IMG/VR virus record: IMGVR_UViG_3300038465_000091
Span: 124,001 to 188,000 of that record
Reading direction: 5' to 3' (one strand)
Length of the DNA stretch: 64,000 nucleotides
A model generated the notes under the pieces. That model was not told the origin of the DNA. It ran no database searches and saw only the letters and a list, made by a program, of their open reading frames with translations. This document shows, one piece after another, positions 6,202 to 62,456 of this stretch; the stretch's first letter is position 1; the number at the start of each line of letters is the position of its first letter. A program made the translations under genes and the position numbers.

Positions 6202-6363
6202 GAAGCCGACATTCGGACAGCAGATGGAAGCGATGCTCGTGCTGGGCTGCGTGGTCTGGCTCGTCATCGGGATCGCCAGTGACGTTTTGAATTTCATCAT
6301 GCGTCACTGGACGATTTTCTCGCCTCTTTCCATTCTCCTTGATTTGGTGGTATATTAAACGAG

Positions 6364-6621: not shown

Positions 6622-6713
6622 GATAATGCAGTACGCATAGTCCAAAATTCCTATCGATTCTGATCCATTTTTGGGTATAATAGTCTTTCAGGCTCTTCTA
6701 TAGGGGATACCTT

Positions 6714-46488: not shown

Positions 46489-47448
46489 ATGGCAAATCTT
46501 TCTCGTACACAACAGCAGACGGCTATGCTTGGACAGTTGCTCAAGACCGCAGGTGGTCGTCAAAAATTAGCGGCGTCGTTGGGACCGTCCCTCCGTCGTC
46601 GTCGTGACTATATGAGCATTGCTCGTAAGGCTCTTATGGTCGAAACTCTTCCCGATGGCGCACTCCCCATCTACGACAAGGAATTCGATGTTAGCGCGAT
46701 GACTGTGGGCTCGACCCCCGGCTCGTCTTTCGTTGAAGCCTTTGTGGTCGGTGAAGAAGGCGGCGACATTGTGCGTGTGACCAAGCCAAAGCGTGTCACG
46801 GTTCCGACGTTTGAAATCGTGTCCAACCCCATGATCCCGATCACCCAGATCAAGGAACGTCGTTTCGATCTCGTTGCTCGCTCACTCAACCTCGCAAAGG
46901 CTGAAGTAGGCGCGGCAGAAGATGGTTACGTGTTCAATCTGTTTGACGGTGTTGCGGCGGGCGCAGTCGGCCATGCACCAAACGATCCGGTTTACAACCC
47001 CGACATTCCAATCAACGCCCCCATCGACATCAACTCGCTGGCGGATGGATTTGGTCAGGTTGCACGCCACGATCTGTCGGTTGCTTTCATCTTCTTCAAT
47101 CCTCGCGATTACACGGATTTGTTGAAGTGGACGCAGCAAAACATCGACCGTGAAACACAGCGCAAGCTGTTGAAGACGGGCGTCATGGGCTATCTCTGGG
47201 GCGCAACGCTCCTCCAGTCTCGTAAGGTCGGCTACGGCTGCATCTATATTCTGGCGGACGCTGAGTTCCTCGGCGTAATCCCAGAACGTATTCCGTTGAC
47301 CGTGATGAGTGCCGACCGTCCTGATTTGAGGCAAATCGGATTCTCGATATTTGAGAATTTGGGCTTCCTCGTCTTCAATCCTTCAGGCGTTCAGCGGTTG
47401 ACCGTTAACGGTCGCTTCAACGCGGCTGCCAACTTCGGCGAGAACTAA
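46489..47448 (+). CDS. Major capsid protein (HK97-fold candidate)
   Basis: AAGGAG RBS; 319 aa; R..L.VE.LP.GA.P.YD, PTFEI.SNP.I....I..R.FD, GYLWGA; strong terminator follows. Confidence 0.85.
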   Translation: MANLSRTQQQTAMLGQLLKTAGGRQKLAASLGPSLRRRRDYMSIARKALMVETLPDGALPIYDKEFDVSAMTVGSTPGSSFVEAFVVGEEGGDIVRVTKPKRVTVPTFEIVSNPMIPITQIKERRFDLVARSLNLAKAEVGAAEDGYVFNLFDGVAAGAVGHAPNDPVYNPDIPINAPIDINSLADGFGQVARHDLSVAFIFFNPRDYTDLLKWTQQNIDRETQRKLLKTGVMGYLWGATLLQSRKVGYGCIYILADAEFLGVIPERIPLTVMSADRPDLRQIGFSIFENLGFLVFNPSGVQRLTVNGRFNAAANFGEN

Positions 47449-48196: not shown

Positions 48197-49135
48197 ATGA
48201 AGTTATTCATCTACCTAACCATTAGGTGGGGGCGTCTTGTGATTGTCTACCGCATAACCAACAAAATAAACGGCAAGGTTTATATCGGCAAGACCGTTAA
48301 GCCGCTTACCAGACGTTGGCAACACCACAAAAGAGATGCTCGTGGTGAGAGTCAAGTGTACTTTCATCGCGCTATCCGCAAACACGGTCCGGAATCTTTT
48401 ATAGTTGAGCCTGTCTATGTAGCCAAAACTGAGAAAGAGTTGGCTGCGATGGAGACGTTCTTCATTGTCCTGCATCAGTCTTACAAACCAGAAAATGGCT
48501 ACAACGGAACTCTTGGTGGGGATGGTATCGGACTTCTCACGGACGAAACCCGTCAACGGATGCGTGATGCTAAAACTCCAGAAATTAGGCGTCGTATGAG
48601 TGAGCGGATGATGGGTGTTCCTCTCTCCATAGAGCATTGTAGGCGCATCGGGGATTCGAAACGTGGTGAAAAAAACCCGCATTGGGGCAAACCACGTAGT
48701 GAAGAAACCCGTCGCAGGATTGGGAAGGCTCAATTAGGAAAGAAACTATCCCCCGAGCACCGCGAAAAAATAGGTAAAGCGCACCAAGGAAAGGCACTGT
48801 CAGAAGAACATCGTCTTGCCTTGAGTGAGGCCCATAAAGGGTTGGTGTTCTCCGATGAACACCGCAAAAATCTTAGTCAAGCTCTCTCGGGGGAGCGAAA
48901 CGTTGGGTACGGCACGAAGTGGGTATCCAAAGATTCCGAAACAATCAGGATTCCTTCCCATCTTCTCGATTCTTATGTAGAACAGGGCTGGACGGCGGGA
49001 AGGGCGTCTTTGTTGGGCAAGAAACCACCTAAAGAACGGATTGAGAAGGTGTTGGCGTACTGGACTCCCGAACGTCGAGCACAGCGGTCGGAGGACTATA
49101 CTATGCGACGGGAGAATCAAACACAATGTTCGTAA
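48197..49135 (+). mobile_element. Free-standing GIY-YIG homing endonuclease with NUMOD3 repeats (start probably GTG 48239)
   Basis: IVYRITN.INGKVYIGKT, AIRKHG, NGYN.TLGGDG, repeated H...I..A..G motifs. Confidence 0.9.
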
Positions 49136-50145
49136 CGATTCCCCTGTCAAAACTGCAACAAAAGTTCGGGGTAAAAACAGCCATCAGTCTTCCCGACTTG
49201 GTGCGTCAAACCAACAGTTTTTCTAAACGCTATAGGCCCGGGTGTACCCCGACTCTCCTTGATTCAAACCCCAAAGCCTTGTTTCTTCACTACAACGTGA
49301 AGTGCAACAAAGAAGATTCCGACCCGGCGGGACACGATGTGCGTGTTCAATTTGACACGACAAAGGTGCAGGAATCTAGCCAAGCGAAAGACCTCGACGT
49401 GCAAATTAGCTGCTCCTGCCCTGCGTTTTTGTATTGGGGTGCCCAGTGGAACCTCCACCAGCGAGATGGGCTGCTAGGGACGCCCAGACCGCAGCTACAG
49501 GCACCTACAGAGCGGCTTGACCTGCGGGGCAACTTCGTTATCTGCAAACACGTCCATTCGGTGTTCGAGCGCATCCTGCCGAGCGTGCAGCACAACATCG
49601 TGAAGATATTGCGTGAGCGGACGATGCAAGAGAAGAAGGACGAACTGGACAAGACGCCCGAGCGCCTCCAAGAGAAACAGGAGGAGATGAAGAAAAAGAA
49701 GGAACTGGAGAAGATCAGGAAGGTTAAGGACAAGGAGGTTCAGGACAAGCTGTACGAAGCCCTCCGCGAGCAAGAGGAAGCCCGCCTGATGCATGAAGAG
49801 GACTTGGAGGATCAGGTAGAGCCCGTGGTCGAGCGCGACAAGCCAGCGACCGCGCCTGCCGAGGAAAAGCCGAAGCCTGCTCCAGTGCCCGCACCAGCAC
49901 CAAAGCCTGCCCCGAATGGAGAAGAAGAGGCGATTCAGAACCTTTATCAGAACGAGCAGGAGAGTATTGAAGAGAAGCACCGTAAGGGCGAGCCTCATTT
50001 GCATCAAGGGCTGCCATACGAAGAAACAGAGGCAAAACCCGTGAAGGAAAAGAAGTCACCTGAGTACATGGAAAAACTTCGAAAGGTCTGGAAGTACGTT
50101 AAGGACCGCGCAAAAGAACTGGCTCTAAGCGAAGAGGGAAAGTAA
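49126..50145 (+). CDS. SWIM zinc-finger protein with a charged C-terminal tail
   Basis: CSCPAF.YWG...CKH. Confidence 0.7.
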   Translation: MFVTIPLSKLQQKFGVKTAISLPDLVRQTNSFSKRYRPGCTPTLLDSNPKALFLHYNVKCNKEDSDPAGHDVRVQFDTTKVQESSQAKDLDVQISCSCPAFLYWGAQWNLHQRDGLLGTPRPQLQAPTERLDLRGNFVICKHVHSVFERILPSVQHNIVKILRERTMQEKKDELDKTPERLQEKQEEMKKKKELEKIRKVKDKEVQDKLYEALREQEEARLMHEEDLEDQVEPVVERDKPATAPAEEKPKPAPVPAPAPKPAPNGEEEAIQNLYQNEQESIEEKHRKGEPHLHQGLPYEETEAKPVKEKKSPEYMEKLRKVWKYVKDRAKELALSEEGK

Positions 50146-50285
50146 TGTCTACGCCTTGGACTCGCGGCGATGTGCTCGATCTGCACATCTTCATCCTGCT
50201 GTTGATCTGGTTCACACTGGACCGAAGCAACATCTATTTCACAGATGTGATCGCATTTGCAAAGAGGCTGTTCAAGAGGAAGTAA
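50145..50285 (+). CDS. 46-aa membrane peptide
   Basis: MSTPWTRGDVLDLHIFILLLIWFTLD...KRLFKRK; overlaps both neighbours by one base. Confidence 0.45.
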   Translation: MSTPWTRGDVLDLHIFILLLIWFTLDRSNIYFTDVIAFAKRLFKRK

Positions 50286-51085
50286 TGCAAATCGTAACGG
50301 CATTCACGAATGGGGCGTACCCGAACAGAGTTCAGCTTGTGGTATCGCCGCCGTTTGTCGGCCCGTTTACACAGCCCGGACCTCTTGGTGCGTTCAACCC
50401 CGTTCGTGATCTGAGCATTTACGCGGATGGGGCGCTTCAGACCATCTCATCCTTCAGTTTCGATACGAATAACAGTCGGTACCTGATCTACTTGATTCAA
50501 GCTATCGATCCTCAGAGTTTTGTTCAGGTCGTCCACCACGTGCCTAATCCCCCCTTCATGGACTTGGTAGCTGGCAGTATCCCCGACTCCTTTGTGCTAC
50601 TAGAAGACGGCTCCATACTTCTTCTTGAGGATGGCGGGGTGGTTGAACTGGAATCGTCGGTCAGCGAATTGCCCAACGTGCCCGGATTTGCGCTGGTTGC
50701 TACCTTCATTCCAGCGGGAGACATCGTATCACCTGAAATGGCATTGACCCCCGTCCCGTCAACTGCCATCTTCGCTGGCGGTACAATAACGCCAAACGTC
50801 ATTGACCTGTTGTGGCTGACGGCGGGTGTGGCACAAGTCATTATAACGGGCACTAATGGGCTCGATACGGGGTTCTTGGGACCTTCGGGCGTCTATTTTT
50901 TAGACCTCACGGGCTCTGGCTCTGGGTGGGGTGTAAGTTGGGGGAATTTTTGGGGAGGGGGAACGCAAGGACCGGGTACCATCATTCTGACGATGACGGG
51001 GTACGATGCCGTGGGAAACCCGATTTTGGTGGGCTCGCCGCCAATCCTTTTGACGGTTACCGCAACTATAACCATAACCACGTAG
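50285..51085 (+). CDS. Virion structural protein (tail/baseplate-associated)
   Basis: ATG 50285 in track ORF 50156..51085; beta-rich; SFVLLEDGS.LLLEDG repeat. Confidence 0.55.
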   Translation: MQIVTAFTNGAYPNRVQLVVSPPFVGPFTQPGPLGAFNPVRDLSIYADGALQTISSFSFDTNNSRYLIYLIQAIDPQSFVQVVHHVPNPPFMDLVAGSIPDSFVLLEDGSILLLEDGGVVELESSVSELPNVPGFALVATFIPAGDIVSPEMALTPVPSTAIFAGGTITPNVIDLLWLTAGVAQVIITGTNGLDTGFLGPSGVYFLDLTGSGSGWGVSWGNFWGGGTQGPGTIILTMTGYDAVGNPILVGSPPILLTVTATITITT

Positions 51086-51179
51086 AGGGACTACAAATCC
51101 GTTATATAGGTGCCGATTAGAGCGGTTGGGAGAAAACAGATGGCTAACGAATTTTACACCTACCTGTGGGAGCATCATA

Positions 51180-54100
51180 ATGCCTAATGGAAAAATCAGT
51201 CAGCTTGCCTCAGGCATCCCCGCCCAAGGTGGAGACCTGCTCCTCATAACACGCATTGGCTCGCCCAATCAAAGCCTTTCCGTGTCGGCGGCGAGTGTCG
51301 CGGCTCTGGGCGGTGGATCGTTCACCAATCTTGCGACTGGCACCAACACCGCAGCCACATTTACGATAGGCAACGGAGCATCACTCACGTTTTCGGGTAT
51401 CACATCCCCAGTCATTACGCAATTAGCTACGGCGTCAGCTTACGCCATCCTCGGTGCATCAGCAGTCACGAACTCGGACGGTGCAAGCACCATAATCAGC
51501 GGCGGGAACATCGGCTCCTTCCCGACCAACACAATCACGCCGGGAAGCCCGCCATGGACTCTTTCGGGTGCAGCAGTGATTACGGCAGTTGCTCAAAACC
51601 AGACAGACTTGGCTACAGCAATCGCAACTTACCAAGCGATGGGGCCGGGAACCGCCCTTGGTGTGGCTCTCGACGGCCTAACCCTCACCCCCGGCGTTTA
51701 CAGCGGCGGCACTTTCACCATCAGCGGCGGAACACTAACTCTCAACGGCGCGGGCGTTTACGTTTTCCTCGCCTCAACTACGATTGGCTTGACGAGTGCT
51801 TCAACAATCATTCTGGCAGGTGGTGCAACAGCCGCGAACGTTGTTTTCGTTTGTGGCAGTTCATTCACCGCAGCCGCCAACGCTGGCACCGTGTTCAACG
51901 GCAACATTCTCGCACATACCTCCATTACAGTTGATGGCGGTATTTACAACGGTCGGTTACTTGCCAATATCGGAGCAGTCACCATTTCTACCGCTACCAC
52001 CATCGCTACACCAGTGGGCTCTTCTCTTGGCATAATCAATGCGAATGAAATTTTCGGCGTGGTTGTTAGCGGGATAGCCCCAACCGCAGGACAAGTTCTC
52101 ACAGCAACAAGTGCCACAACAGCGAATTGGCAAACTCCCAGCGGGGGCGGCGGTTCGGGAACAGTGACCTCAGGCACCGTGGGACAAATCGCTATTTATG
52201 CAGCCAGCGGCACTACGGTTAGCGGCTTTTCCAATGGCGTGTTTTACCCCGAGACGTATGGCGCGGTTGGCAACGGTATCCACGATGACACTACAGCCAT
52301 CCAAGCAGCAATCACAGCCGCTTCAGCGAGCGGTGGAACAGTTCAGTTTGGTGTCAAGACCTACCTTATCACTGCTACGCTTGTAATCACCTCCTCTAAT
52401 GTCGGCATGGCGGGATTGACCGCAGGTACTCCCGTTGGGGGAGGCGCTAGTGGAACCATAATCACTTGCAACAGCGCAACTGTCGATATGGTAAATGTCG
52501 GCAACGGCGGCACACAGGTTCACAGCAATCTTCTAAAAGACTTCTGCCTTGCACGATCCGTCACTCCCACCACTGGAAACGGACTCATACTGAACAGCGT
52601 GATCGATGCCAAGCTGGAAAACCTCTGGGTCTTCGACAGCATCTTCTGCTTCTATCACCAGAATGCCCAGCTTTGCACGTACACTAATTGCTTAGCTGAA
52701 TGGACGGCCCTCAGCAACGGCATCACGGGATACGGCTTTAAGATGGTGGGAACAAACACTACGGGGTTCTTCTCTACGCGAATGACGGACTGTATTGCCA
52801 TCAACAAAGCGTCCTCAGGAACTTTCCATGGAATGCACGTAAGCACTTCGGGGGCTGGAGTATCCGATCTTTTCACCGAGGGTTTCGAGACGGCCTCATG
52901 CACGTATGGAGTGTACATCGACGGAGCTTCATCTAACTTCAACGAAGATATTCATTTCTTAAGAACCATCCACGACGCTTCAACTGTGAGTGCTTTTTAT
53001 ATCACAGGTTTGAACGGGCACGACGCTTACGTAGAAATAAACGGCGGGTACACAGCTAATCTTGGGTCGGCACCCGCTATCGACATCGAGAACAGTTCTG
53101 GAGTTGTAGTTAACAATGTCAATTTCATCGGGCTCAACGCCGGTACTGGTCCGTGCGTCCTAATAAATGGTTCTAGCTCAAAAGGTAATATCGTTCAGTC
53201 GAACGTGATGTACTGTAGCTCTACGTCGCAGACCGTGATTAGCCTTACGGGGAGTGCCGCGAATAACAACGTCAGCAGCAACATCATAGTTGGAGCCGTG
53301 CACAGCTTCGCCGTTGGTATCGGTCTGGCTTCGTCGTCATACAACACGGTTGACGGAAACACGTTGTCAGGTACGGGCACAGTAGGAATTTCATTGGACA
53401 CTGGCAGTGGGCACAACGGTGGAGTCAACGTAGTCGATCCCACATCTATCACAACCCCTCTATTGGATCATGGCACGGGGAATTTCGTTACGATCACTGG
53501 AGGCGGCGGTTCGGGAACGGTCACTCACACGGGTTCGTTGACTTCAAATGCCATCATTCTTGGCAATGGCTCTGCGGATATTAAACCGGGGGTAGTTCTT
53601 CCCGGCAGCGTGACGGTCTATTATGACGGTACGGGAAATTTCAGCGTGCCGGGAGGTGGAGGGGGAAGTCCGGGCTCCCTATTTGCTAAAACGTGGTTTA
53701 CAACGGGGCTGGCGGGGCAGAGAGCAATAAATACTGTCTATCAGAACACCACGGGGCAACCCATCATAGTGTTTGGGTGGATGGTGGGAAATAACAACGA
53801 TCTTCAAGCCGTGACCGATGCATCTCCCACCCCGTCTACAGTAGTGTTAGACCAGTATGCCCAGTCGGGATTTGGCACCAATTTCTTTTTCATGGTGTCT
53901 AACAACGATTACTACGAACTCATCTGCGTTGGTGGTACTTCTGTAGCTTGGGTAGAGTTGGAGATTATCACAGGGAGCGTTACATTTTCAGGAGAATTGT
54001 CGGGCAGTCGTTCGCTAAGTACGGTTTACCAAAACACCAGCGGCGGAGCAATGCTGGTGCTGGTCGATCTTTCAAGCGTCGGTGGTGGTACAACCATCCA

Positions 54101-54608
54101 AGGTATAAGTGACGCTGGCGCTTCCCCCACAAACGTTGTTTGGCAGTCCGATGGGGTCTCCACGGGAAGCCAGACGATCTGGATGATGATTCCGAACAAT
54201 CATTACTACGAAGTGACTTGCTCGGGGGCGTCTGTTGGACATTGGAATGAGTATTCTCTGCCATTCAATGCTTCCAAGTCCATTGATTATTCGATTGCTC
54301 CAGTGCTGAGAAGTCTTCAAGCCATCGCGGGTTCCGCCCCATCAACCACAGGCGTTCAGATAGCGAGTGTGGGCAAAGATATGTTTGTATCGGTGTCATC
54401 CCTGCCTTCAACGACGGGAAATTTGATTATAAACTCCAGTTATTGTTCCCCTCCGGGAACTACTCCGTATGATACCACCACTATGTCGAACACCAATTCG
54501 CAACGTAGTGCGGGGGCACTGTTTGTATCACTTGGGGAATTCTATACCGCTCGACAAAACAGTGGTTCGCCCACGTTGGCTCACTGGTGGGAATATACAC
54601 TCGGGTAA
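51180..54608 (+). CDS. Tail fibre/spike: DUF3494 ice-binding-like domain, pectate-lyase-like beta-helix, triple C-terminal repeat
   Basis: AYAILGASAVTN...DLATA...LTLTPGVY...LTL.G.GVYVF...GGATAANVVF.CGSS...F.GNILA.TSIT...GRLLA..GAVT (~51410-52010); YGAVGNG.HDDT.AIQAAI (~52240); NTVYQNT repeats. Confidence 0.8.
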   Translation: MPNGKISQLASGIPAQGGDLLLITRIGSPNQSLSVSAASVAALGGGSFTNLATGTNTAATFTIGNGASLTFSGITSPVITQLATASAYAILGASAVTNSDGASTIISGGNIGSFPTNTITPGSPPWTLSGAAVITAVAQNQTDLATAIATYQAMGPGTALGVALDGLTLTPGVYSGGTFTISGGTLTLNGAGVYVFLASTTIGLTSASTIILAGGATAANVVFVCGSSFTAAANAGTVFNGNILAHTSITVDGGIYNGRLLANIGAVTISTATTIATPVGSSLGIINANEIFGVVVSGIAPTAGQVLTATSATTANWQTPSGGGGSGTVTSGTVGQIAIYAASGTTVSGFSNGVFYPETYGAVGNGIHDDTTAIQAAITAASASGGTVQFGVKTYLITATLVITSSNVGMAGLTAGTPVGGGASGTIITCNSATVDMVNVGNGGTQVHSNLLKDFCLARSVTPTTGNGLILNSVIDAKLENLWVFDSIFCFYHQNAQLCTYTNCLAEWTALSNGITGYGFKMVGTNTTGFFSTRMTDCIAINKASSGTFHGMHVSTSGAGVSDLFTEGFETASCTYGVYIDGASSNFNEDIHFLRTIHDASTVSAFYITGLNGHDAYVEINGGYTANLGSAPAIDIENSSGVVVNNVNFIGLNAGTGPCVLINGSSSKGNIVQSNVMYCSSTSQTVISLTGSAANNNVSSNIIVGAVHSFAVGIGLASSSYNTVDGNTLSGTGTVGISLDTGSGHNGGVNVVDPTSITTPLLDHGTGNFVTITGGGGSGTVTHTGSLTSNAIILGNGSADIKPGVVLPGSVTVYYDGTGNFSVPGGGGGSPGSLFAKTWFTTGLAGQRAINTVYQNTTGQPIIVFGWMVGNNNDLQAVTDASPTPSTVVLDQYAQSGFGTNFFFMVSNNDYYELICVGGTSVAWVELEIITGSVTFSGELSGSRSLSTVYQNTSGGAMLVLVDLSSVGGGTTIQGISDAGASPTNVVWQSDGVSTGSQTIWMMIPNNHYYEVTCSGASVGHWNEYSLPFNASKSIDYSIAPVLRSLQAIAGSAPSTTGVQIASVGKDMFVSVSSLPSTTGNLIINSSYCSPPGTTPYDTTTMSNTNSQRSAGALFVSLGEFYTARQNSGSPTLAHWWEYTLG

Positions 54609-54632: not shown

Positions 54633-55295
54633 ATGTCCGTTTCGTTTGGTCCTAAAATCCCGCAACTTTTCGTCAGCGCAGCCCTCGGTGATAACTACTA
54701 CACTGCGGGTGAGGCAATGCTTCGTAGTTTTCAAGCATTGATTCAGCCGAATGTCATCGGCGTCGGGCTGAACACACCGCCCGGCTCACCTGCCAACGGG
54801 GACTCCTACGTTGTTGGGACTGCTCCCACGGGTTTGTGGACAGGCCAAGCCAACAGTATCGCCTATTGGACTACGGATGATCCCACCAACATACCGGGCT
54901 ACTGGATGTTCTTTGTCCCTAAATCGGGATGGATTGTAGGGAGCGCAGGTCAAATCTATATCTTTGGCACATCGTGGGGGCTCATCTCCTCAGGAGTAGC
55001 GATCAATAATCAGACAGTCAACTACGTCGCCGCCTTGTCCGACAACAACAACATGACGGACATGAACATGGCTACACCCGGCACGTTCACGGTTCCACCG
55101 AACTCCAGCGTGGCTTTTCCGATTGGCGCGGTTCTGACCGTGGTTCAAGCGGGGATAGGTCAAATCACGTTTGTACAGGGCGCTGGTGTGACCATTAACA
55201 CCCCCGCATCGCTGGCAACCCGTACTCAGTTTTCAACAATTGCTGTGACTCAAACCGCCGCAAATGTTTGGCTGGCTAGTGGAGACCTCGCCTAA
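54633..55295 (+). CDS. DUF2793-like tail-associated protein
   Basis: TPPGSPANGDSYVVG..PTG.W.GQ...IA.W...W.F..P..GW. Confidence 0.75.
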   Translation: MSVSFGPKIPQLFVSAALGDNYYTAGEAMLRSFQALIQPNVIGVGLNTPPGSPANGDSYVVGTAPTGLWTGQANSIAYWTTDDPTNIPGYWMFFVPKSGWIVGSAGQIYIFGTSWGLISSGVAINNQTVNYVAALSDNNNMTDMNMATPGTFTVPPNSSVAFPIGAVLTVVQAGIGQITFVQGAGVTINTPASLATRTQFSTIAVTQTAANVWLASGDLA

Positions 55296-56219
55296 ATGAA
55301 TACGACGTTCAAACTATTTCCACACCGCCACAAATGGTTCTCCAAGTATAATTACATTCCGAGTCCGGGAGGTCGTGTTCTTAACACGGTTTATCAGAAC
55401 ACAAATGTGAAATCCCTCATCGTTATAGGAGCCGTTAGCGGAATCATGACTATCTTAAGTGATAGCTCTCCGACTCCAACCACTACAATTCTTCAAGGAC
55501 ATGGGTTTCTGAATCAATGGTTTCCCTTCACTGTCATCGTTCCTCCGGGTGACTACTATGAGATCGTGGGAACGCCTCCTAATTTGCAACTAGAAGCCGA
55601 GCTAACGGTCAACGGCAGCCCTGTCGTGTTTTCAGGTGATCTCGGTCCAGCAGGCGCAAACACTCGCGCAATGAACACCGTTTATCAAAACACGGCAAGC
55701 AAGGCAAAACTGATCGTGGCGAACATCGGCTCTTCCACTAGCGGTACCATTGGCTTGATCTGTGACGCTTCACCGACTCCAACGACAATAATCGGCGATT
55801 CCGTCATGTCCAACGGCAGCACATATCAGTTTCCGATGGTCATGATGGTGCCTCAAGGATACTATTACCAAGTAACGGGGTCAGCGACAGTTTCGAACTG
55901 GAATGAGTATACGCTTCCTTTTGGAGCAACGCAGTCGATTGATCTTGTCGGGAGCCGATCCTACGACACGCCCTACTCCGCAGGCGTGAAGGATATGTGG
56001 ATCACCGCTTCAGGTAATGTGACGGGTGCGGGTCAAGTCTCTTCTTCTGGCGCTGGTCAACCGGATCCAGTCGGGCAAACCGCATGGTCAACTTGGCTGG
56101 GACTGGATGCCATGTCTTGGGCACTCGTCCAGCCAAATGACGTGTATGTTCAGACAGCAGTTCAGACAGCAGGAGTGGACGGGACGTTAACACACTGGTT
56201 CGAGTACGTTTTGGGTTAA
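55296..56219 (+). CDS. Stand-alone paralog of the tail-fibre C-terminal triple repeat
   Basis: RVLNTVYQNT and RAMNTVYQNT units; ends LTHWFEYVLG versus LAHWWEYTLG in 51180..54608. Confidence 0.75.
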   Translation: MNTTFKLFPHRHKWFSKYNYIPSPGGRVLNTVYQNTNVKSLIVIGAVSGIMTILSDSSPTPTTTILQGHGFLNQWFPFTVIVPPGDYYEIVGTPPNLQLEAELTVNGSPVVFSGDLGPAGANTRAMNTVYQNTASKAKLIVANIGSSTSGTIGLICDASPTPTTIIGDSVMSNGSTYQFPMVMMVPQGYYYQVTGSATVSNWNEYTLPFGATQSIDLVGSRSYDTPYSAGVKDMWITASGNVTGAGQVSSSGAGQPDPVGQTAWSTWLGLDAMSWALVQPNDVYVQTAVQTAGVDGTLTHWFEYVLG

Positions 56220-56552: not shown

Positions 56553-59500
56553 ATGAAGCTGGACGCCACACAAGCGGCGGCTGCCAAGCTTTCCCACCTA
56601 ATCGAGCCCGGGCGAACCGTCTATTCCACAGACGGCCACGCCTATAGGGTCTTGTCAAAGATCGCCGCTGGCGGCTCCTTGAGCTTCCGACTTGCGAACC
56701 TTCAGGGACAGCCGGTTCCAATCCCCGCAGACTTCTCCCCGATTGACGGGGCTCGGATGCGTTTCGCGTCCTTCCTGAAGTTCGCATTCAACAAAGACCT
56801 CACTGCGATTGTCAACTCACTGATTGAACAGGCGGGGCTCCCCACTGACCCAGCGATGAACTGGGCTGGGTGGTTTCAAAAGGTCTATGGCGAAATCCTA
56901 GCATCTGTTACCCCCAACTTTGATCTCCAAGACGAGATCATGTACAACACCGTCATTAAGCTCCTGATGATGCGTAAGGACAAGGACGGAAAAACACTTC
57001 TGGAAAACGCTGCCGACAAAATTTCAGGTTTGTCCAGCGGCATTAACAAGATAAAGCGTCAACTTCGTGATCCGAACTTGACTCCAGACGAAAAGAAGAC
57101 GCTAGAGAATCGACTCCACTGGCAGGAAAAAGTTAAGGCTGATCCTGTGGAGAAACAAGTCAGCAGCCTCCTGAAGAAAACTTTCGAGTATTACGCACGA
57201 CATCATGCTCGTGTGGATGCGAAAAATTACGCCTATTCGGTGCATACCCCCAGCCATCGCCTCGAAACGGAAAATATCGAAGACGTTGCTATCGAACAAC
57301 CCACACCATCTGGAGAGGGAACGTATAATATCCTTGATACCGAGGAACACGGCGTGGCTCCGGGCGTCGGACTGGGCGAGTCCGAACGCGACATCATGCA
57401 GTTCATCGATCAATTCCAAGAGTGGGTGAGGGGCAAGGAGACCCCGAAATCCGCTCCTAACTATGCCGAATTGCTCAGGATTTACTGGGATCAGGCACAG
57501 CGAATTGACGATGTTAAGATCAGCGATCTGACTCAAGAGTGGATTCGCCGCACAGGTTTGAGCTTTGACTCCCTGAAGCAGTATCGGGATAAGCTCGGCA
57601 TCCTGATTCGAGATTTCGTCTACGAGAACAAAGTCCAACTGGGCAACTCCTACAAGTTCGTGGACTTGCTAAAGCACATGTTCCCGCCGCCAAAGCAAAA
57701 AGCACGTCCCGCCAAGGCTTCGTCCGACCACCATCACGACCGAACCGAATGCAGAAAGTGCGGCAATGTCCAGACTTGCCGTTGCCCTGCGACCAAGGTC
57801 ACGTCCTATGTGGCTTCCTGCGACAACTGCAAGACGGCGGATGGTTTGGAAGCACGAGTGCTTGATCCGAACTGTCCTGAATACAAAAAATACGCCGATG
57901 ATTTGATCCGTCGCTTCGGTCAGACATCGCAGGTCTCCGAGATGCTGGGACAATTCGAAGATGAGCATTTCCCCACTTGTGTACACTGCCAGCAATACAA
58001 TCAGGATTGGCGGGCAGGTAAGGTATCAGCGGCAAAACCCAAGTGCCCCCATTGTGGCTCTGACGATTACGGCTTGATGCCCACGGACTTCGAGACCGCC
58101 AAGTGCAATGGTTGCGGCAAGAACTGGAATCATGGCATCGTCAAGGGTATCAATGATCCGAAGGAAGCTGCTCGCACGGCGGATGATGAAGGAGGGGGTA
58201 AAACGTGCGAAAATTGTGGGAGTTATTACGGTGGGTATACATGTCTTAATTGTGGGCGAAAAAAGAAGCTGGAAGAAGAGGTAGATCGTACCAGCAAGGA
58301 ACTCAAGAAGTTCCCCAAGGGACCAACAGGCATGACGCCCGACGATGTGAAGGCTACTCCCGAATGGCAGGCGGCTAAACGTAATTACGGTCAAGCCTTC
58401 GCCAAGCTGCGAGAGTTCAATTCCAAAAAGTGTGCTGCCGATGATCCGACTCGTGACACCCTTGACGAGACGCTGAAGTATGACAACCCAGACAAGGACA
58501 CCAAGGGGTTCCACGACCCCGCCGACCTCGGTCAATGCGCCTGTGAGTGGGATGAATGTCCGCTGGGTCACCAAGCGGGTGGGTGCCAGAATCCCGCAGC
58601 CCACATGCTTGAAATCTATGGATACAAAACCCGCTACTGCCAGCCATGCACCGACGCAACTATCGAGTACATCCGATTGGAACAAGGCACTGGCGATCCC
58701 GATGACACGGTTAAGATTCTGTCCTCCGCACATACTGCTGGTGCCCCGTACTGCGACGGTTGTGATCGTCTGAAGGCAAACTGCATCTGCGAAGGCTGCG
58801 AGTGCCCAGAAAATAAAAACGCAGGCAAGTGGGGCGATAAAATCAAGAAGATGGAAGCTCGACGTGGCGAGTTCATCGAGAAAACTCTTAAGAATGCCGT
58901 AGGGCCAACGGAAGAGGATGATCTTGAGATGGCTAGGCGTGGTCCGATTCAATACGAGGAACTACCCGAAATGGAAACCCGAATTCGCCCACGAGAAGAA
59001 CAGTCGAAATTTCCGACTCCTCGACCTACTACACGGCGTAAGGAGGGGATGCTCGGTCATGATTTTGTGGATGCCGATCAGCAAGCGATTCGCCCCGACA
59101 TTACGCCGGGTGACACTGGGCGCTTACCTCATGGACGCACGCAGGGATCAGTTAAAGAATCTGCGGAACTTGCTGGTCGCGGCGGGGATAAAGATGACGT
59201 GCGCGGTGCGGGCGATCTGTGGCGTGAAGAGTTTTACCAAAGCGGCAATGCGCCCCCAAAGATTGCGACATCAGGTAAATGGAAAGTTCTTCTGCGGGAT
59301 TCCAAGGGGAATCAGCGTGAGCAGGAGGTTTCAGGCGTAAATTACGGCTCTGCCGAACGTGCTGTGAGAAAATATATGAAGAATGGTGAAAGGGTTGTGT
59401 CGATGACTATCGCAAGCAAGACGGCTGCCCCCGCTCCTGCGGCACCCGCACAGGCACAAGCACCAGCGCCCGCCCCAGCACCAGCAGCCACTCCCGCCCC

Positions 59501-62456
59501 TCCAGCGCAAGCGCCAAGCGCGAACACGGTAGTTGCCCCACCGCCCGGAACGCCGATTGCTCTTCCCTCGGGACAAGGAGAAGATACACCGGAAAAAAGA
59601 ACAGTTCCGCCAGAAATCCCGAACAGGAAGTACCACATGACAAGTAAAAATTCCGCACTTAAAACCGAACAGAATACGCCAGAGATGGAAGCTCAGGTAG
59701 CTCAACTGGCACAAACGAACCCGCTCACGGAGATTCACGAGAACTGCAACCCGTACTTCGAGCACGGGCAATGGTGGGTTGTCTGCGGGCCGTGCGGAGC
59801 CACTTGGTCGGTCGTTGATGTGGGTCAGTTCATCGGAGATGAGGGCGACATCGACCTTGAAGAGATTGATAACGGTGACGGTTCTTGTGCGGAGAATTTC
59901 CACGAGTCTGCCGATCACAGCAGCCCACGTCAGGGCTTCATCTATCAGGCGGAAATGTGGTGCCCGACTTGTGCGAAGGAGATCGCCGCCGACATTCAGA
60001 AGAACTACCCTAAGCAGGTCCCCGCCGATCCAACGGATGAGTATTCTTATGATTCCGACAGCTACCCGAAGGGACCGTTCTTCGAGGAAGAATCAGACGC
60101 TCCTGAGCACTGCGCGGGCTGCCACATTTTCCTTGAGAACCCTCTGACCACGCATGGTCAGGAGTACATGCAGTCGATGGTTGACGAAGCTCTGGCGAAG
60201 GGACGCGGCGAAGAGCCGCACATCAAGGAATGGATGGACTTTTACGGCTATCATCCTGACACTGAGGGAGCCGAAGACGAACATGAGGCGTCCGCCGCTT
60301 CCGACAGAATCAATGCGATGCCGCAGCGTGGCAAGCCAAAGACTCCCGAAGAGTTGGGGCTGGTTGAGAAATCCGATACGGAACTCCGTCTTGAGGGGAT
60401 TCCTCCGCGTCCTAAGAAAACCGCCGATGGCGCTTCGTTGCTTGAACCAGAAGTTAGCTTCGAAGATAAACCAGACCCCTTGCTCGACAACAGTAATAAT
60501 TTGCAAAACTACAGCTATGCACCGCAGAAAGACACAACAGATAGTAGGGACACGGCCACGCTGGACGACAACATCGAAATTTTGAAACGTTACGGCTATG
60601 CCCTTTTCAGTGGTGGAAAATCGGGTGGGAAACAATTCTGGAAAAGTCCCATTGGAACTGTAGTTATCATGTCCACCAGCGGTGAGTGGATGTTTGGTGC
60701 GGACGGTACCAGAGGAACGACCAGCACGGATTTAGACAGTAAGCTTTTGAAATACCACCACAAAATGGTCCCAAAAGCGGGGGCGTCCAAAACCGCCGAA
60801 ATTGATATGGGTCAGCTTGAGAGCGTGCAGGATCGAAAAGATCGCCTGAGCAAGCCCGACAAGAGTCCGATGTACGGCGTGACACTTCTTCGCGAACTTT
60901 CAGCCCCCGGCATTCCAAAGGGTGAAGTGATCGTGTTCGGTTATTACTACCCAGATGGGCAATGGGGCAAGCAGCAGCTTCAATGGTGGACAACGATGGC
61001 GAAGACCGAGTATGATAGCACCGTCACTCAGGTCAAACGTCGCAGTCGCGGTACGAATCAGGAAAAGTCAACGGCCCTGTACGAGTCGTTGAAAGGACGT
61101 GGTACGGCGGTTGAGCCGGGTACGTCGTCTGACGCTATCATCGAGCAATTCAAGACGCAGAAGGAATCATCCATGGAAAACAAACAGGCTGCAATCGCAC
61201 AACCCACGTCTGGCGAGGACGAAGGCTATTACGTCAAGGTCACCTACACTAAGGGCGGTATTGATCTGAGCCCGACTGAGAATCTTCTAAGGGAAGTCGC
61301 CGAGGAGCAAATGCAGGATGAAAGCGGCAACTCGACTTATGAGTTCGCCCACAACATTGAGCTTGACGACATCTGGGAAATGATGGAGGATTTCTTCACC
61401 AATGGCTGGGAGAAAGTAAATCCCGAGGATATTGGTGCGCTAACTGACGGAGAAATCTTCTCCGATCCCAACGGCAACGTCTACTGGCATGAGCGGTATC
61501 AGATCGAAAGCATGACCGATGAACTGAAGGCAGGCAACACGGTGTTCATGCAGTACGGCGGCAATCTGTTCGATGAGGAAGATGAAGAAACGCCTGCTCC
61601 CGATCCGAACCAGATGAACCTCCCACTCCAGTCTTCCAAGAAGGAAGCCACGGGCGAGATGAGTCAGTCCGAGGCTGATGACCGTGAGGCATGGCCGATG
61701 CACCACGCTATCGCTGACGCTCTGGGCGGCACGGTCAAGGCTTTTGACCAGTATCAAGGTCCGTACGTTCTTGTGGGCTCTGAGGCTCGCGGACAGGGCA
61801 CCTATGCTCCCGCAATCCCGATGAAGGGTACCGTGCGCCTCTGGGTACAGGCGGACGAGGGTAGTGACGGGGCATTCCTGACCGTCTACAACGAAGACAA
61901 CGATAAAGTTAGCGAGCCGTTCCATTGGGAAGACATGGAAGGCGCGGTCAATGCCGCCATGAGCGTAATGGGCGATGAGCCCGAGACAATCGAAGCCTCC
62001 ACCAAGCAGGCGGAACTTGACATCCCCAAACCGGACAGTTGGGGGTGTACTTGTTCAGATAAAGGAGCACGCGGACAACACAAGTCCAATTGTCCTAAGG
62101 CTCCGAAGCAACGTGGCGAGTACCACGGCGCGAGTAAGCAAGCAGCGCCCGGCGACGGTGGACTACAACGCGACGTGCAGAACCAGTACGAGAACCACCC
62201 CCTGATCGAAATGCTGTGGGGTTCCCTGAAACGTGACCCAGCGAACAAAGATCGCGTCCAGACGGCATGGGGCACCAAGACGAAGCAGGGTTTGGTGCTC
62301 AGTGTAGCTCGCGCCATGAAGGAAAGCCCCGTCTCGGGTAAAGAAAGCAGTCAGAAATGCAAATGCGGCAAACCGACAGCTAAAGGCGATCACCGCTGCG
62401 AGGACTGCCGCTCAAAACAGCATTCCGAGGCAGAAAAAGCGACTGGCGTAGAATAA
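56553..62456 (+). CDS. 1967-aa mosaic protein, candidate internal-head polyprotein
   Basis: AGGAGG RBS; many short Zn-ribbon and helical modules separated by K-x-A linkers. Confidence 0.7.
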   Translation: MKLDATQAAAAKLSHLIEPGRTVYSTDGHAYRVLSKIAAGGSLSFRLANLQGQPVPIPADFSPIDGARMRFASFLKFAFNKDLTAIVNSLIEQAGLPTDPAMNWAGWFQKVYGEILASVTPNFDLQDEIMYNTVIKLLMMRKDKDGKTLLENAADKISGLSSGINKIKRQLRDPNLTPDEKKTLENRLHWQEKVKADPVEKQVSSLLKKTFEYYARHHARVDAKNYAYSVHTPSHRLETENIEDVAIEQPTPSGEGTYNILDTEEHGVAPGVGLGESERDIMQFIDQFQEWVRGKETPKSAPNYAELLRIYWDQAQRIDDVKISDLTQEWIRRTGLSFDSLKQYRDKLGILIRDFVYENKVQLGNSYKFVDLLKHMFPPPKQKARPAKASSDHHHDRTECRKCGNVQTCRCPATKVTSYVASCDNCKTADGLEARVLDPNCPEYKKYADDLIRRFGQTSQVSEMLGQFEDEHFPTCVHCQQYNQDWRAGKVSAAKPKCPHCGSDDYGLMPTDFETAKCNGCGKNWNHGIVKGINDPKEAARTADDEGGGKTCENCGSYYGGYTCLNCGRKKKLEEEVDRTSKELKKFPKGPTGMTPDDVKATPEWQAAKRNYGQAFAKLREFNSKKCAADDPTRDTLDETLKYDNPDKDTKGFHDPADLGQCACEWDECPLGHQAGGCQNPAAHMLEIYGYKTRYCQPCTDATIEYIRLEQGTGDPDDTVKILSSAHTAGAPYCDGCDRLKANCICEGCECPENKNAGKWGDKIKKMEARRGEFIEKTLKNAVGPTEEDDLEMARRGPIQYEELPEMETRIRPREEQSKFPTPRPTTRRKEGMLGHDFVDADQQAIRPDITPGDTGRLPHGRTQGSVKESAELAGRGGDKDDVRGAGDLWREEFYQSGNAPPKIATSGKWKVLLRDSKGNQREQEVSGVNYGSAERAVRKYMKNGERVVSMTIASKTAAPAPAAPAQAQAPAPAPAPAATPAPPAQAPSANTVVAPPPGTPIALPSGQGEDTPEKRTVPPEIPNRKYHMTSKNSALKTEQNTPEMEAQVAQLAQTNPLTEIHENCNPYFEHGQWWVVCGPCGATWSVVDVGQFIGDEGDIDLEEIDNGDGSCAENFHESADHSSPRQGFIYQAEMWCPTCAKEIAADIQKNYPKQVPADPTDEYSYDSDSYPKGPFFEEESDAPEHCAGCHIFLENPLTTHGQEYMQSMVDEALAKGRGEEPHIKEWMDFYGYHPDTEGAEDEHEASAASDRINAMPQRGKPKTPEELGLVEKSDTELRLEGIPPRPKKTADGASLLEPEVSFEDKPDPLLDNSNNLQNYSYAPQKDTTDSRDTATLDDNIEILKRYGYALFSGGKSGGKQFWKSPIGTVVIMSTSGEWMFGADGTRGTTSTDLDSKLLKYHHKMVPKAGASKTAEIDMGQLESVQDRKDRLSKPDKSPMYGVTLLRELSAPGIPKGEVIVFGYYYPDGQWGKQQLQWWTTMAKTEYDSTVTQVKRRSRGTNQEKSTALYESLKGRGTAVEPGTSSDAIIEQFKTQKESSMENKQAAIAQPTSGEDEGYYVKVTYTKGGIDLSPTENLLREVAEEQMQDESGNSTYEFAHNIELDDIWEMMEDFFTNGWEKVNPEDIGALTDGEIFSDPNGNVYWHERYQIESMTDELKAGNTVFMQYGGNLFDEEDEETPAPDPNQMNLPLQSSKKEATGEMSQSEADDREAWPMHHAIADALGGTVKAFDQYQGPYVLVGSEARGQGTYAPAIPMKGTVRLWVQADEGSDGAFLTVYNEDNDKVSEPFHWEDMEGAVNAAMSVMGDEPETIEASTKQAELDIPKPDSWGCTCSDKGARGQHKSNCPKAPKQRGEYHGASKQAAPGDGGLQRDVQNQYENHPLIEMLWGSLKRDPANKDRVQTAWGTKTKQGLVLSVARAMKESPVSGKESSQKCKCGKPTAKGDHRCEDCRSKQHSEAEKATGVE

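What the first reader, a model, noticed from the sequence alone, without database searches (positions are those of the whole stretch)
51410..52010. Ice-binding-like (DUF3494) domain at the N-terminal end of a tail fibre/spike
Seen in sequence: about 200 aa with the DUF3494 beta-solenoid signature, Thr/Ala/Ser-rich, ahead of a pectate-lyase-like beta-helix. Established knowledge: DUF3494 proteins bind ice and inhibit recrystallisation in cold-adapted microbes, often as adhesin tips. Inference: the virion may adsorb to ice or mineral surfaces or resist freeze-thaw. The domain could instead be repurposed for glycan binding.
Basis: partly seen in the sequence, partly recalled or inferred. Interest (0 to 1): 0.62.

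Follow-up and report, generated by a model that had tools for sequence, protein, structure and literature searches.

The report
Ice-binding-fold domain in phage tailspike
A giant phage from peat and permafrost soils carries a genuine "ice-binding-like" (DUF3494) domain as a side-arm on the stem of a tail spike, so the virus particle may stick to ice or another ordered surface, though nobody has tested this.

Summary
Window 51180-54608 (+) encodes a 1142-aa protein. Residues 90-273 (nt 51447-51998) match Pfam PF11999 at E 5.9e-24, 85 bits against a cut-off of 28.7. An AlphaFold model of aa 75-280 has pLDDT above 90, and all 31 of its significant PDB neighbours (Foldseek E <= 0.001) are solved DUF3494 ice-binding proteins.

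The rest of the protein is a tailspike-type beta-helix (aa 353-774) plus a poorly modelled C-terminal part. The gene lies in the structural module of a jumbo myophage record (223.5 kb, about 71% complete). That phage is related to the Arctic Acidobacteriota phage Tunturi_5 and is found in peat and permafrost metagenomes.

New points:
- The domain is an insertion between two stem segments that are predicted to trimerise, so three copies should project sideways from the spike.
- The stem with the domain is kept in the closest relative while the distal body is swapped. Conversely, the same body occurs elsewhere without the domain.
- The genome holds six such domains in five large ORFs, at least two with tail-fibre features.
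- The flat Thr/Ser "B face" used by proven ice binders is conserved, but equally so in all relatives.

Ice binding is plausible (about 0.3) but unproven. The supported reading is an accessory adhesion side-domain on the virion.

The parts
51180..54608 (+). Whole gene: 1142-aa mosaic tailspike/tail-fibre protein (stop codon included). The ORF is open from TTG 51126, but ATG 51180 is taken as the start.
   Evidence: ORF list and translation. In the closest relative, the open frame (stop to stop) begins at the equivalent ATG (L015/L016 6001). It lies in the slot after the homologue of the Tunturi_5 gp336 tail protein, where Tunturi_5 has a gene annotated 'tail fiber protein' gp337.
51180..51398 (+). 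N-terminal stem segment (aa 1-73), predicted to trimerise. It ends with a fibre repeat motif ('motif A', aa 44-73).
   Evidence: Disordered in the monomer model. In the three-copy model, the confident interface residues are 4-73 and 283-320; score 0.61, best of 3 controls 0.00. Motif A aligns to repeats in the fibre protein P0004.
51399..52028 (+). DUF3494 / IBP-1-fold module (aa 74-283). The Pfam PF11999 match is aa 90-273 = nt 51447-51998. The long alpha-helix is aa 138-153 (nt 51591-51638).
   Evidence: PF11999 at E 5.9e-24. AlphaFold pLDDT is above 90 for aa 75-280. All 31 Foldseek PDB hits at E <= 0.001 are DUF3494 ice-binding proteins: 6EIO TM 0.78, 7BWX TM 0.82, rmsd 2.1 A. No residue of 74-282 is in the confident trimer interface.
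51459..51989 (+). Six predicted B-face strands of the solenoid, the face that binds ice in solved family members: aa 94-99, 178-183, 200-205, 227-232, 247-252 and 265-270.
   Evidence: Mapped through the phmmer alignment to AnpIBP 7BWX and the published ice-binding-site segments (PMC7277481). Of 24 outward positions, 21 are Ala/Gly/Ser/Thr. S227 and T230 correspond to AnpIBP S153 and T156. The register of strand aa 178-183 is uncertain.
52029..52235 (+). Second stem segment / linker (aa 284-352) with 'motif B' (contains GQVLT). It is predicted to trimerise together with aa 4-73.
   Evidence: Interface residues 283-320. In P0004, motif A and motif B are contiguous (its aa 1323-1392), so the DUF3494 module is an insertion between them here. 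In this genome GQVLT-type motifs occur only in three DUF3494-bearing ORFs.
52236..53501 (+). Right-handed parallel beta-helix (aa 353-774), tailspike/depolymerase type.
   Evidence: The AlphaFold model has pLDDT mostly 75-95 in this part. Foldseek PDB hits are Klebsiella phage KP32gp38, Sf6, HK620, CBA120 TSP1-3, phi29 gp12 and the AlgE4 epimerase. Homologues carry PF12708/PF13229/PF05048. The cap matches PfbA 3ZPP/4MR0. There is a weak parallel-beta-helix repeat hit.
53502..54605 (+). C-terminal part (aa 775-1142) with an internally repeated beta-rich unit, presumably the distal receptor-binding end. Its fold was not resolved.
   Evidence: pLDDT is below 60. It is conserved at 73% identity in P0002 and 68% in P0003. 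aa 846-1142 are 34% identical to the separate downstream ORF 55296-56219.
49126..50145 (+). Context: homologue of the Tunturi_5 gp336 'tail protein'. It anchors the synteny.
   Evidence: 54% identity by tblastn to Tunturi_5; 93% to the closest relative L016.
54633..55295 (+). Context: DUF2793 tail-fibre-like protein immediately downstream.
   Evidence: PF10983 at E 2.3e-15, plus several PHROG tail fibre / minor tail families.
46489..47448 (+). Context: major head protein, which places the gene in the structural module.
   Evidence: phrog_2522 at E 1.3e-42. 71% aa identity (72.9% nt) to the Tunturi_5 major head protein.

Best explanation
The stretch encodes a genuine DUF3494 (IBP-1 fold) beta-solenoid. 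It is inserted as a self-contained side-domain between two trimerising stem segments, in the conserved virion-proximal part of a mosaic tailspike. The spike belongs to a jumbo myophage, probably of Acidobacteriota, from peat and permafrost soils. In this fold the N- and C-terminal coils stack next to each other, so the domain can be plugged into a fibre shaft and stick out. The trimer model keeps it out of the interface, giving three outward-facing copies per spike. The distal beta-helix (a polysaccharide depolymerase type) and the C-terminal domains carry host specificity and are swapped between relatives; the stem with DUF3494 is retained. I therefore read the domain as an accessory adhesion module that does not set host range. 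It would hold the virion, weakly and multivalently, on an ordered hydroxyl-rich surface through its conserved flat Thr/Ser B face.

Shown: domain identity, fold, insertion position, mosaicism, multi-copy presence, conservation of the B face, and habitat.

Inferred: trimeric lateral display (model only), virion location (synteny and homology only), and adhesion as the function.

Not resolved: the ligand. I put ice or ice-like ordered water at about 0.3 overall. Host or biofilm polysaccharide, or mineral or organic soil surfaces, together get about 0.3.
For: - Domain and fold: PF11999 at E 5.9e-24; the model and all 31 significant PDB neighbours are DUF3494 ice binders.
- Tailspike body.
- Structural-module synteny with Tunturi_5.
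- Three-copy model: score 0.61, best of 3 controls 0.00. The mark was reached by 21 of 30 proteins solved as pairs of one chain and by 0 of 23 solved as single chains. The runs agree in at least 91% of contacts and partner pLDDT is at least 86. Confident interface residues are only 4-73 and 283-320.
- Motifs A and B are contiguous in P0004 but split by the domain here.
- The closest phage keeps aa 1-321 at 80% identity with an unrelated C-terminal body.
- P0002 and P0003 have the same body (73% and 68% identity) without the domain. P0007 has the same domain (65% identity over aa 31-291 by BLASTP; 71% over aa 64-291 by tblastn) on a different body.
- Six domains lie in five large ORFs of the genome. 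One has five He_PIG Ig-like domains, like bacterial fibrillar adhesins; another has PHROG tail-fibre hits.
- Related viral contigs carry 3-5 copies each.
- B-face outward positions are 81% Ala/Gly/Ser/Thr in 22 viral copies, against 15% at inward positions and 52% elsewhere. This argues that the surface is under constraint.
- The relatives inspected have no signal peptide.
Against: - No binding of anything has been measured, and no DUF3494 domain is experimentally known to bind a ligand other than ice.
- Virion incorporation is inferred, not shown by proteomics.
- The trimer model was folded without an alignment and lies outside the calibration of the test (three copies, not two). Residues not named in the interface are uncertain rather than shown to be free.
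- Thr/Ser ladders can be conserved for solenoid stability alone, so a conserved B face does not prove a ligand.
- Some paralogues lie outside recognisable structural modules, for example next to a helicase.
Confidence: 0.6

Rival explanations
1. Purely structural module. The solenoid is a rigid spacer, stabiliser or assembly aid of the fibre stem with no external ligand, and its Thr/Ser ladders are kept only for folding.
For: - It sits in the proximal stem rather than at the tip.
- Beta-solenoids are common building blocks of phage fibres.
- The same body works without it in P0002 and P0003.
- B-face conservation is no higher in viral copies than in other relatives.
Against: - In the trimer model the domain contributes no confident contacts to the stem.
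- A spacer would not need a conserved solvent-exposed face with 81% small or hydroxyl residues across copies that differ widely elsewhere.
- The position within the protein varies (N-proximal, central, C-terminal, or duplicated), which fits a functional add-on better than a fixed structural role.
Confidence: 0.25
2. Homotypic receptor recognition. The phage domain, related to DUF3494 proteins assigned to Acidobacteriia (the presumed host class), binds face-to-face to DUF3494 proteins on the host surface.
For: - The closest named relatives include proteins assigned to Terracidiphilus and Acidobacteriia MAGs. Viral and other copies are interspersed in the tree.
- Ice-binding faces of AnpIBP pack face-to-face in crystals (PMC7277481).
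Against: - There is no precedent.
- The five relatives inspected lack signal peptides and may themselves be phage proteins binned into MAGs.
- The domain is retained while the distal specificity parts are swapped.
Confidence: 0.05
3. Auxiliary 'cryoprotection' gene. The protein is made to protect the infected host, or the lysate, from ice damage, as proposed for PF11999 genes in Arctic marine viromes.
For: - PF11999 genes on viral contigs have been read this way (PMC11515562).
- Some related phage contigs carry short stand-alone DUF3494 ORFs.
- Fragments identical to the gene occur in peat metatranscriptome libraries.
Against: - Here the domain is fused into a 1142-aa tailspike in the structural module, with a trimerising stem and a depolymerase-type helix.
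- There is no signal peptide, so it would not reach extracellular ice before lysis.
Confidence: 0.03

Closest known systems
Single-domain DUF3494 ice-binding proteins of cold-adapted microbes (AnpIBP 7BWX, EfcIBP 6EIO, TisAFP 3VN3/5B5H/7DC5, FfIBP 4NU2, ColAFP 3WP9, LeIBP 3UYU)
   Same: Same Pfam family and same fold: a triangular right-handed beta-solenoid with a long helix on the A face (TM 0.7-0.8, 23-32% identity). The flat B face is rich in Thr, Ser, Ala and Gly, and it includes the equivalents of AnpIBP S153 and T156.
   Different: Those are secreted ~25-kDa proteins with measured thermal hysteresis or recrystallisation inhibition. This one is an internal insertion in a 1142-aa phage structural protein, has no signal peptide, and has no measured activity.
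Multi-domain bacterial ice adhesins / DUF3494 fibrillar adhesins (SfIBP_1 6BG8 with tandem Ig-like domains; IBPv 5UYT with two DUF3494 domains)
   Same: DUF3494 is combined with extender domains and with a second copy. Paralogues in this genome show five He_PIG Ig-like domains plus DUF3494 (2070 aa) and two DUF3494 domains (837 aa). The adhesion logic is the same.
   Different: Those are anchored on bacterial cells; here the carrier would be a virion. In the target protein the domain is proximal, not at the distal tip, and is flanked by trimerising fibre motifs rather than Ig domains.
Phage tailspike depolymerases with conserved N-terminal particle-binding parts and exchangeable bodies (P22/Sf6/HK620 tailspikes, CBA120 TSP1-4, Klebsiella phage KP32gp38)
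   Same: A beta-helix body, a predicted homotrimer, and a conserved N-terminal part with a swapped distal part between close relatives.
   Different: None of the solved tailspikes that the body model matched is described as carrying a DUF3494 domain. No Caudoviricetes protein in BFVD has this fold, and no record among 50,697 deposited phage genomes matched the domain by tblastn.
PF11999 'ice-binding-like' genes reported as viral auxiliary genes in Arctic surface-microlayer viromes (PMC11515562), and DUF3494 proteins of the giant virus Hyperionvirus
   Same: The same Pfam domain encoded by viruses from environmental samples.
   Different: Those were treated as stand-alone host-benefit genes, or are unstudied giant-virus ORFs. 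No fibre context, multi-copy pattern or insertion architecture was described for them.
Tunturiibacter phage Tunturi_5 (PP885688), jumbo myophage from Arctic tundra soil
   Same: Syntenic structural module: sheath 44% aa identity, protease 63%, major head protein 71%, gp336 homologue 54%.
   Different: Tunturi_5 has no PF11999 domain anywhere in its 309 kb. Its tail fibre in the same slot is unrelated in sequence.

Membership tests
Pfam PF11999 / DUF3494 (IBP-1 fold) domain family | Match to the family HMM above the curated gathering score | tested here: met
   85.3 bits against a cut-off of 28.7, E 5.9e-24, profile positions 1-206 of 208. Confirmed on the genome record at 88.9 bits.
Pfam PF11999 / DUF3494 (IBP-1 fold) domain family | Triangular right-handed beta-solenoid with a long alpha-helix packed alongside | tested here: met
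   The AlphaFold model has pLDDT above 90 for aa 75-280 and a helix at 138-153. The 31 Foldseek PDB hits at E <= 0.001 are all DUF3494 proteins, with target TM up to 0.82.
Pfam PF11999 / DUF3494 (IBP-1 fold) domain family | [quoted passage not shown] | tested here: met
   Homology mapping onto the AnpIBP ice-binding-site segments gives 21 of 24 outward positions as Ala/Gly/Ser/Thr, with a Thr ladder T97-T268-T250-T230. This is by alignment only; one strand register is uncertain.
Functional ice-binding / antifreeze proteins | Measured adsorption to ice (thermal hysteresis, recrystallisation inhibition, ice shaping, ice-affinity purification) | not testable with these tools
   No sequence signature separates ice binders from other DUF3494 proteins. 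The literature states that site-directed mutagenesis is needed to locate an ice-binding site (PMC5673226). The family also occurs in ice-free habitats.
Functional ice-binding / antifreeze proteins | Exposure to the extracellular medium where ice forms | tested here: inconclusive
   There is no signal peptide. Exposure would come from being part of a released virion, which is inferred from synteny, the tailspike fold and the trimer model, not from proteomics.
Functional ice-binding / antifreeze proteins | Origin in a habitat that freezes | tested here: met
   The 5.1-kb stretch is held by runs labelled peat metagenome and permafrost metagenome; 6 runs hold at least half of its words, and the holders span 18 studies. 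The closest isolate comes from Arctic tundra soil. Soil temperatures of the samples were not available.
Phage tailspike / tail-fibre depolymerases | Right-handed parallel beta-helix body similar to solved tailspikes | tested here: met
   Model of aa 353-774 and its Foldseek hits to KP32gp38, Sf6, HK620, CBA120 TSPs and phi29 gp12. Homologues carry PF12708/PF13229.
Phage tailspike / tail-fibre depolymerases | Homotrimer formed through the N-terminal part | tested here: met
   Three-copy model: score 0.61, best of 3 controls 0.00. The mark was reached by 21 of 30 proteins solved as pairs of one chain and by 0 of 23 solved as single chains. Runs agree in at least 91% of contacts; partner pLDDT is at least 86. 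Interface is aa 4-73 and 283-320. This is a model only, outside the two-copy calibration.
Phage tailspike / tail-fibre depolymerases | Gene in the virion structural module, with a conserved N-terminus and exchangeable distal part | tested here: met
   It lies downstream of the major head protein and the gp336 homologue, and upstream of a DUF2793 fibre-like gene. aa 1-321 are conserved at 80% while the rest is replaced in the closest relative.
Phage tailspike / tail-fibre depolymerases | Glycan-cleaving activity and catalytic residues | not tested
   No catalytic residues were assigned. The closest structural matches include both lyases/hydrolases and an epimerase.
Viral auxiliary metabolic gene for host cryoprotection | Stand-alone, non-structural gene whose product acts for the host | tested here: not met
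   The domain is fused inside a structural tailspike protein.

The most novel reading that the evidence does not exclude
The virion itself binds ice. Each tail spike, together with four other large ORFs of the same phage (at least two with fibre features), displays DUF3494 domains that adsorb to ice crystal surfaces. In freezing peat, the particles would then be held at ice-water interfaces or in brine veins where hosts concentrate, and/or be shielded locally from recrystallisation damage. This would be the first ice-binding protein that is a structural part of a virus particle.
Probability: 0.3. Interest if true: 0.8.

Novelty: new variant of a known kind. Interest (0 to 1): 0.55.

Why it matters
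DUF3494 is the most widespread microbial ice-binding fold, yet what it does outside icy habitats is an open question. So far it is known from secreted proteins and cell-surface adhesins.

Here it appears as a recurrent, mobile side-domain of phage tail fibres: six copies in one jumbo phage, 3-5 in relatives, and dozens of viral contigs from soil metagenomes. If it binds ice, virus particles in seasonally frozen soils would have a dedicated way to attach to, or survive, ice. That would bear on virus persistence and virus-host encounter in permafrost regions. If it binds something else, these fibres offer a compact, easily expressed system for finding the non-ice ligand of the family.

Either way, the case warns against annotating viral PF11999 genes as host-cryoprotection auxiliary genes without looking at their context.

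Tried and rejected
- tblastn of the whole protein and of the domain alone against 50,697 deposited phage genomes gave no match, even at E <= 1. The low-complexity filter may have cost sensitivity, so this shows rarity, not absence.
- Synechococcus phage S-SKS1, named in PMC11515562 as holding homologues, has no PF11999 match.
- PHROGs gave nothing for the target. NCBIfam gave only weak beta-helix hints.
- A profile-driven scan of genome contigs with alignment A1 failed because there was no conserved stretch. The single-protein scan returned only 10 distant cellular relatives at 32-41% identity. No donor lineage can therefore be named.
- 'Relatives' cannot be drawn for a virus record.
- I could not obtain ecosystem metadata for the IMG/VR contigs. 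The key test, enrichment in frozen versus never-frozen soils, was therefore not possible.
- The C-terminal 370 aa modelled poorly with pLDDT below 60, so no fold is assigned.
- A face-by-face analysis on model coordinates was not possible. The B face was mapped by alignment instead, and one strand register (aa 178-183) remains doubtful.
- Rejected readings: low-complexity artefact (full-length HMM and fold match); assembly chimera (identical gene on two further contigs, and one read-derived contig across the junctions); auxiliary-gene reading (fusion to a structural protein).
- The metatranscriptome fragments show presence in RNA libraries, not proven transcription.
- The large representative-protein search was not used, because word search, family scans and folds left nothing open that it would settle.
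Full report
OBSERVATION. The only long ORF over the finding is window 51126-54608 (+). I take ATG 51180 as the start, because in the closest relative the open frame (stop to stop) begins at the equivalent ATG. The product is 1142 aa. Pfam PF11999 (Ice_binding, DUF3494) matches aa 90-273, nt 51447-51998. The match has E 5.9e-24 and 85.3 bits against a cut-off of 28.7, and covers almost the whole profile. The module aa 75-283 is 16% Thr, 16% Ala, 14% Gly and 10% Ser, with only 5 charged residues.

FOLD. I modelled aa 1-345 with AlphaFold on a 106-sequence alignment. The model has pLDDT above 90 for aa 75-280 and a long helix at aa 138-153; the flanks are disordered in the monomer. All 31 Foldseek hits in the PDB at E <= 0.001 are solved DUF3494 ice-binding proteins: EfcIBP 6EIO, AnpIBP 7BWX (TM 0.82, rmsd 2.1 A, 32% identity), TisAFP, FfIBP, LeIBP, ColAFP, SfIBP_1, IBPv and the Cryosericum IBPs. 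phmmer also finds them by sequence, for example 7BWX at E 9e-9 over the full domain.

REST OF THE PROTEIN.
- aa 353-774 model as a right-handed parallel beta-helix (pLDDT mostly 75-95). Its best structural matches are phage tailspike depolymerases (KP32gp38, Sf6, HK620, CBA120 TSP1-3, phi29 gp12) and the AlgE4 epimerase.
- Close homologues of this part carry PF12708, PF13229 and PF05048.
- aa 775-1142 model poorly. They contain an internal repeat and are 34% identical to the separate ORF 55296-56219.

GENOME CONTEXT. The window is bases 124001-188000 of a 223.5-kb IMG/VR virus record estimated to be 71% complete. The structural module is syntenic with Tunturiibacter phage Tunturi_5, a 309-kb jumbo myophage isolated from Arctic tundra soil on an Acidobacteriota host (PMC11924767). 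Identities are sheath 44%, protease 63%, major head protein 71% and gp336 'tail protein' 54%. The target lies in the slot where Tunturi_5 has an unrelated 'tail fiber protein', gp337. Downstream is a DUF2793 fibre-like gene. An Acidobacteriota host is an inference from this kinship.

INSERTION AND TRIMER MODEL.
- In the fibre protein P0004, two short motifs are contiguous (its aa 1323-1392). In the target, the same motifs lie at aa 44-73 and aa 284-322, and the DUF3494 module sits exactly between them.
- In the IBP-1 fold the first and last coils stack next to each other (coil order given in PMC7277481). The two termini therefore emerge at one end, which is the geometry an insertion domain needs.
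- A three-copy model of aa 1-330 passed the test. The score was 0.61 against 0.00 for the best of 3 controls. The mark was reached by 21 of 30 proteins solved as pairs of one chain and by 0 of 23 solved as single chains. The runs agree in at least 91% of contacts, and partner pLDDT is at least 86.
- The confident interface residues are only 4-73 and 283-320; none lies within 74-282.
- This supports, but does not show, a trimeric stem from which three DUF3494 domains project. The job lies outside the two-copy calibration, and residues not named in the interface are uncertain.

MOSAICISM.
- The closest phage (G001/L016; major head protein 98% identical) has, in the same slot, a 944-aa protein. 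It shares aa 1-321 at 80% identity and nothing after that.
- P0002 and P0003 (about 990 aa) share aa 297-1142 at 73% and 68% identity, but have a different N-terminus without DUF3494.
- P0007 (706 aa, on a 170-kb viral contig) shares the DUF3494 module: 65% identity over aa 31-291 by BLASTP and 71% over aa 64-291 by tblastn. Its body is different.
- So the stem with its side-domain and the distal specificity part are exchanged independently. The side-domain stays with the stem in the closest pair of genomes.

A DOMAIN FAMILY WITHIN THE PHAGE. The genome holds six PF11999 domains in five ORFs:
- the target;
- an 837-aa protein with two copies;
- a 1066-aa protein;
- a 2070-aa protein with five He_PIG Ig-like domains;
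- a 466-aa protein with PHROG tail-fibre hits.
Three related viral records carry 3, 3 and 5 copies, whereas Tunturi_5 has none. Two scans of IMG/VR returned 13 and 25 contigs with close relatives of two of the copies. Another phage contig has two stand-alone DUF3494 ORFs next to the terminase. In a FastTree tree of 157 domains, the target copy falls in a different well-supported clade from the other five copies of its own genome. Viral copies are interspersed with metagenome proteins, including one assigned to a Terracidiphilus MAG. Five inspected relatives have no signal peptide.

PRECEDENT. In BFVD the fold occurs only in three Hyperionvirus (giant virus) proteins. No deposited phage genome matched the domain. 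A full-text search for DUF3494 or PF11999 together with phages found only one virus report, which treats three PF11999 genes as host-cryoprotection auxiliary genes (PMC11515562).

THE PUTATIVE BINDING FACE. I used the phmmer alignment to AnpIBP and that protein's published ice-binding-site segments and mutants (PMC7277481).
- The B-face strands map to aa 94-99, 178-183, 200-205, 227-232, 247-252 and 265-270.
- Of 24 outward positions, 21 are Ala, Gly, Ser or Thr.
- There is a Thr ladder T97-T268-T250-T230.
- S227 and T230 correspond to S153 and T156. In AnpIBP, Tyr substitutions at those two residues cut activity to 17% of wild type.
- Across 22 viral copies the outward positions are 81% small residues, against 15% at inward positions and 52% elsewhere. 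In 135 other relatives the figures are 83%, 20% and 51%.
The face is thus conserved and compatible with ice binding, but it does not distinguish this domain from relatives of unknown function.

HABITAT AND EXPRESSION. The 5.1-kb stretch is held by runs labelled peat metagenome and permafrost metagenome; six runs hold at least half of its words, and the holders span 18 studies. One DNA-run contig covers 50355-53331 without a difference. Short contigs identical to the gene, including the DUF3494 part, occur in three peat metatranscriptome libraries. That is presence in RNA libraries, not proof of transcription.

INTERPRETATION. The architecture supports an accessory side-domain on a trimeric tailspike stem that does not set host range and presents a conserved flat face. 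I read this as an adhesion module (confidence 0.6).

The ligand is open. In favour of ice:
- every solved member of the fold binds ice;
- the face has the right chemistry and lacks the aromatic and charged residues usual in sugar-binding sites;
- the phage lives in soils that freeze;
- the multi-copy display resembles multi-domain ice binders and ice adhesins.

Against ice:
- PF11999 is among the most abundant Pfams across soils in general (bioRxiv 10.1101/2023.11.02.563126);
- the Arctic relative Tunturi_5 lacks it;
- no benefit of ice binding to a virion has been demonstrated.

I put ice as the natural ligand at about 0.3 and a non-ice ordered surface (host or biofilm polysaccharide, mineral or organic matter) at about 0.3. 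A purely structural role gets 0.25. Homotypic binding to host DUF3494 proteins (0.05) and an auxiliary cryoprotection role (0.03) take part of the remainder.

COMPARISON AND NOVELTY. The domain is a member of PF11999 by sequence, fold and face. Membership among functional ice-binding proteins cannot be tested here. The carrier is a member of the tailspike/depolymerase kind by fold, predicted trimer, synteny and modular exchange. The combination looks new: DUF3494 as an insertion in a phage fibre stem, present in many copies per genome and recurring across soil viral contigs. I found no description of it, so I rate it a new variant of a known kind.

PROCEDURE NOTES. Only genetic code 11 was used. 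The domain and the full-length protein were searched separately, as the operators advised. The large representative search was not used.

Noticed in passing
genome record outside the window: G000:C1 53038-56241(-), 97133-103354(+), 198515-199987(-), 200688-203228(-) (loci L008-L011): Four further large ORFs of the same phage carry PF11999 domains, five more copies in all. One has two copies; one combines five He_PIG Ig-like domains with DUF3494, like a bacterial fibrillar adhesin. Three of the copies form a tight cluster in the tree, which suggests recent duplication or conversion within the genome.
   Followed up: partly
window 48197-49135 (+); also L048:9912-10676(-) and L049:11238-11828(-): A GIY-YIG/NUMOD3 homing endonuclease sits two genes upstream of the target. 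It is absent from the closest relative (L016). Homing or HNH endonuclease genes also lie next to two (or three, since one sits between two) of the other DUF3494 genes. This may be linked to the mobility of these fibre modules.
   Followed up: partly
window 55296-56219 (+): A 307-aa ORF is 34% identical to aa 846-1142 of the target. The C-terminal (presumed receptor-binding) unit of the spike therefore also exists as a separate gene two ORFs downstream.
   Followed up: no
window 56553-62456 (+): A 1967-aa ORF has no Pfam hit and only a marginal PHROG hit. Its aa 1-284 are 56% identical to the ORF at the same place in the closest relative. aa 1600-1666 resemble part of the Tunturi_5 'DNA ejection protein' gene region.
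   Followed up: no
window 32880-36542 (+) and 41188-42090 (+): An unusually long tail sheath (1220 aa, 44% identical to Tunturi_5 gp326) and the head maturation protease (63% identical) confirm the jumbo-myophage structural module.
   Followed up: partly
L051 (IMG 3300037230 contig, 44 kb) 1752-2876 and 6001-7002: Another phage contig has two stand-alone DUF3494 ORFs (374 and 333 aa; the latter is 74% identical to the target's domain). They flank an 820-aa ORF just after the large terminase, so the domain is not confined to fibre genes in phages.
   Followed up: no
BFVD entries A0A3G5A745, A0A3G5ACG7, A0A3G5AEI1: The only viral proteins in BFVD with this fold are three DUF3494 proteins of Hyperionvirus, a giant virus known from a metagenome.
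   Followed up: no
window 50156-51085 (+): The 309-aa ORF directly upstream of the target has no family hit. It is only 62% identical to the copy in the closest relative, which also has about 2.2 kb of extra DNA between it and the fibre gene.
   Followed up: no
L053-L077 and L013-L025 (IMG/VR contigs): Close relatives (41-100% identity) of two of the phage DUF3494 modules occur on contigs of 7-186 kb. The two scans returned 13 and 25 loci, with some contigs in both. One contig is a complete 105-kb genome with terminal repeats and three copies. Their ecosystems could not be looked up.
   Followed up: partly
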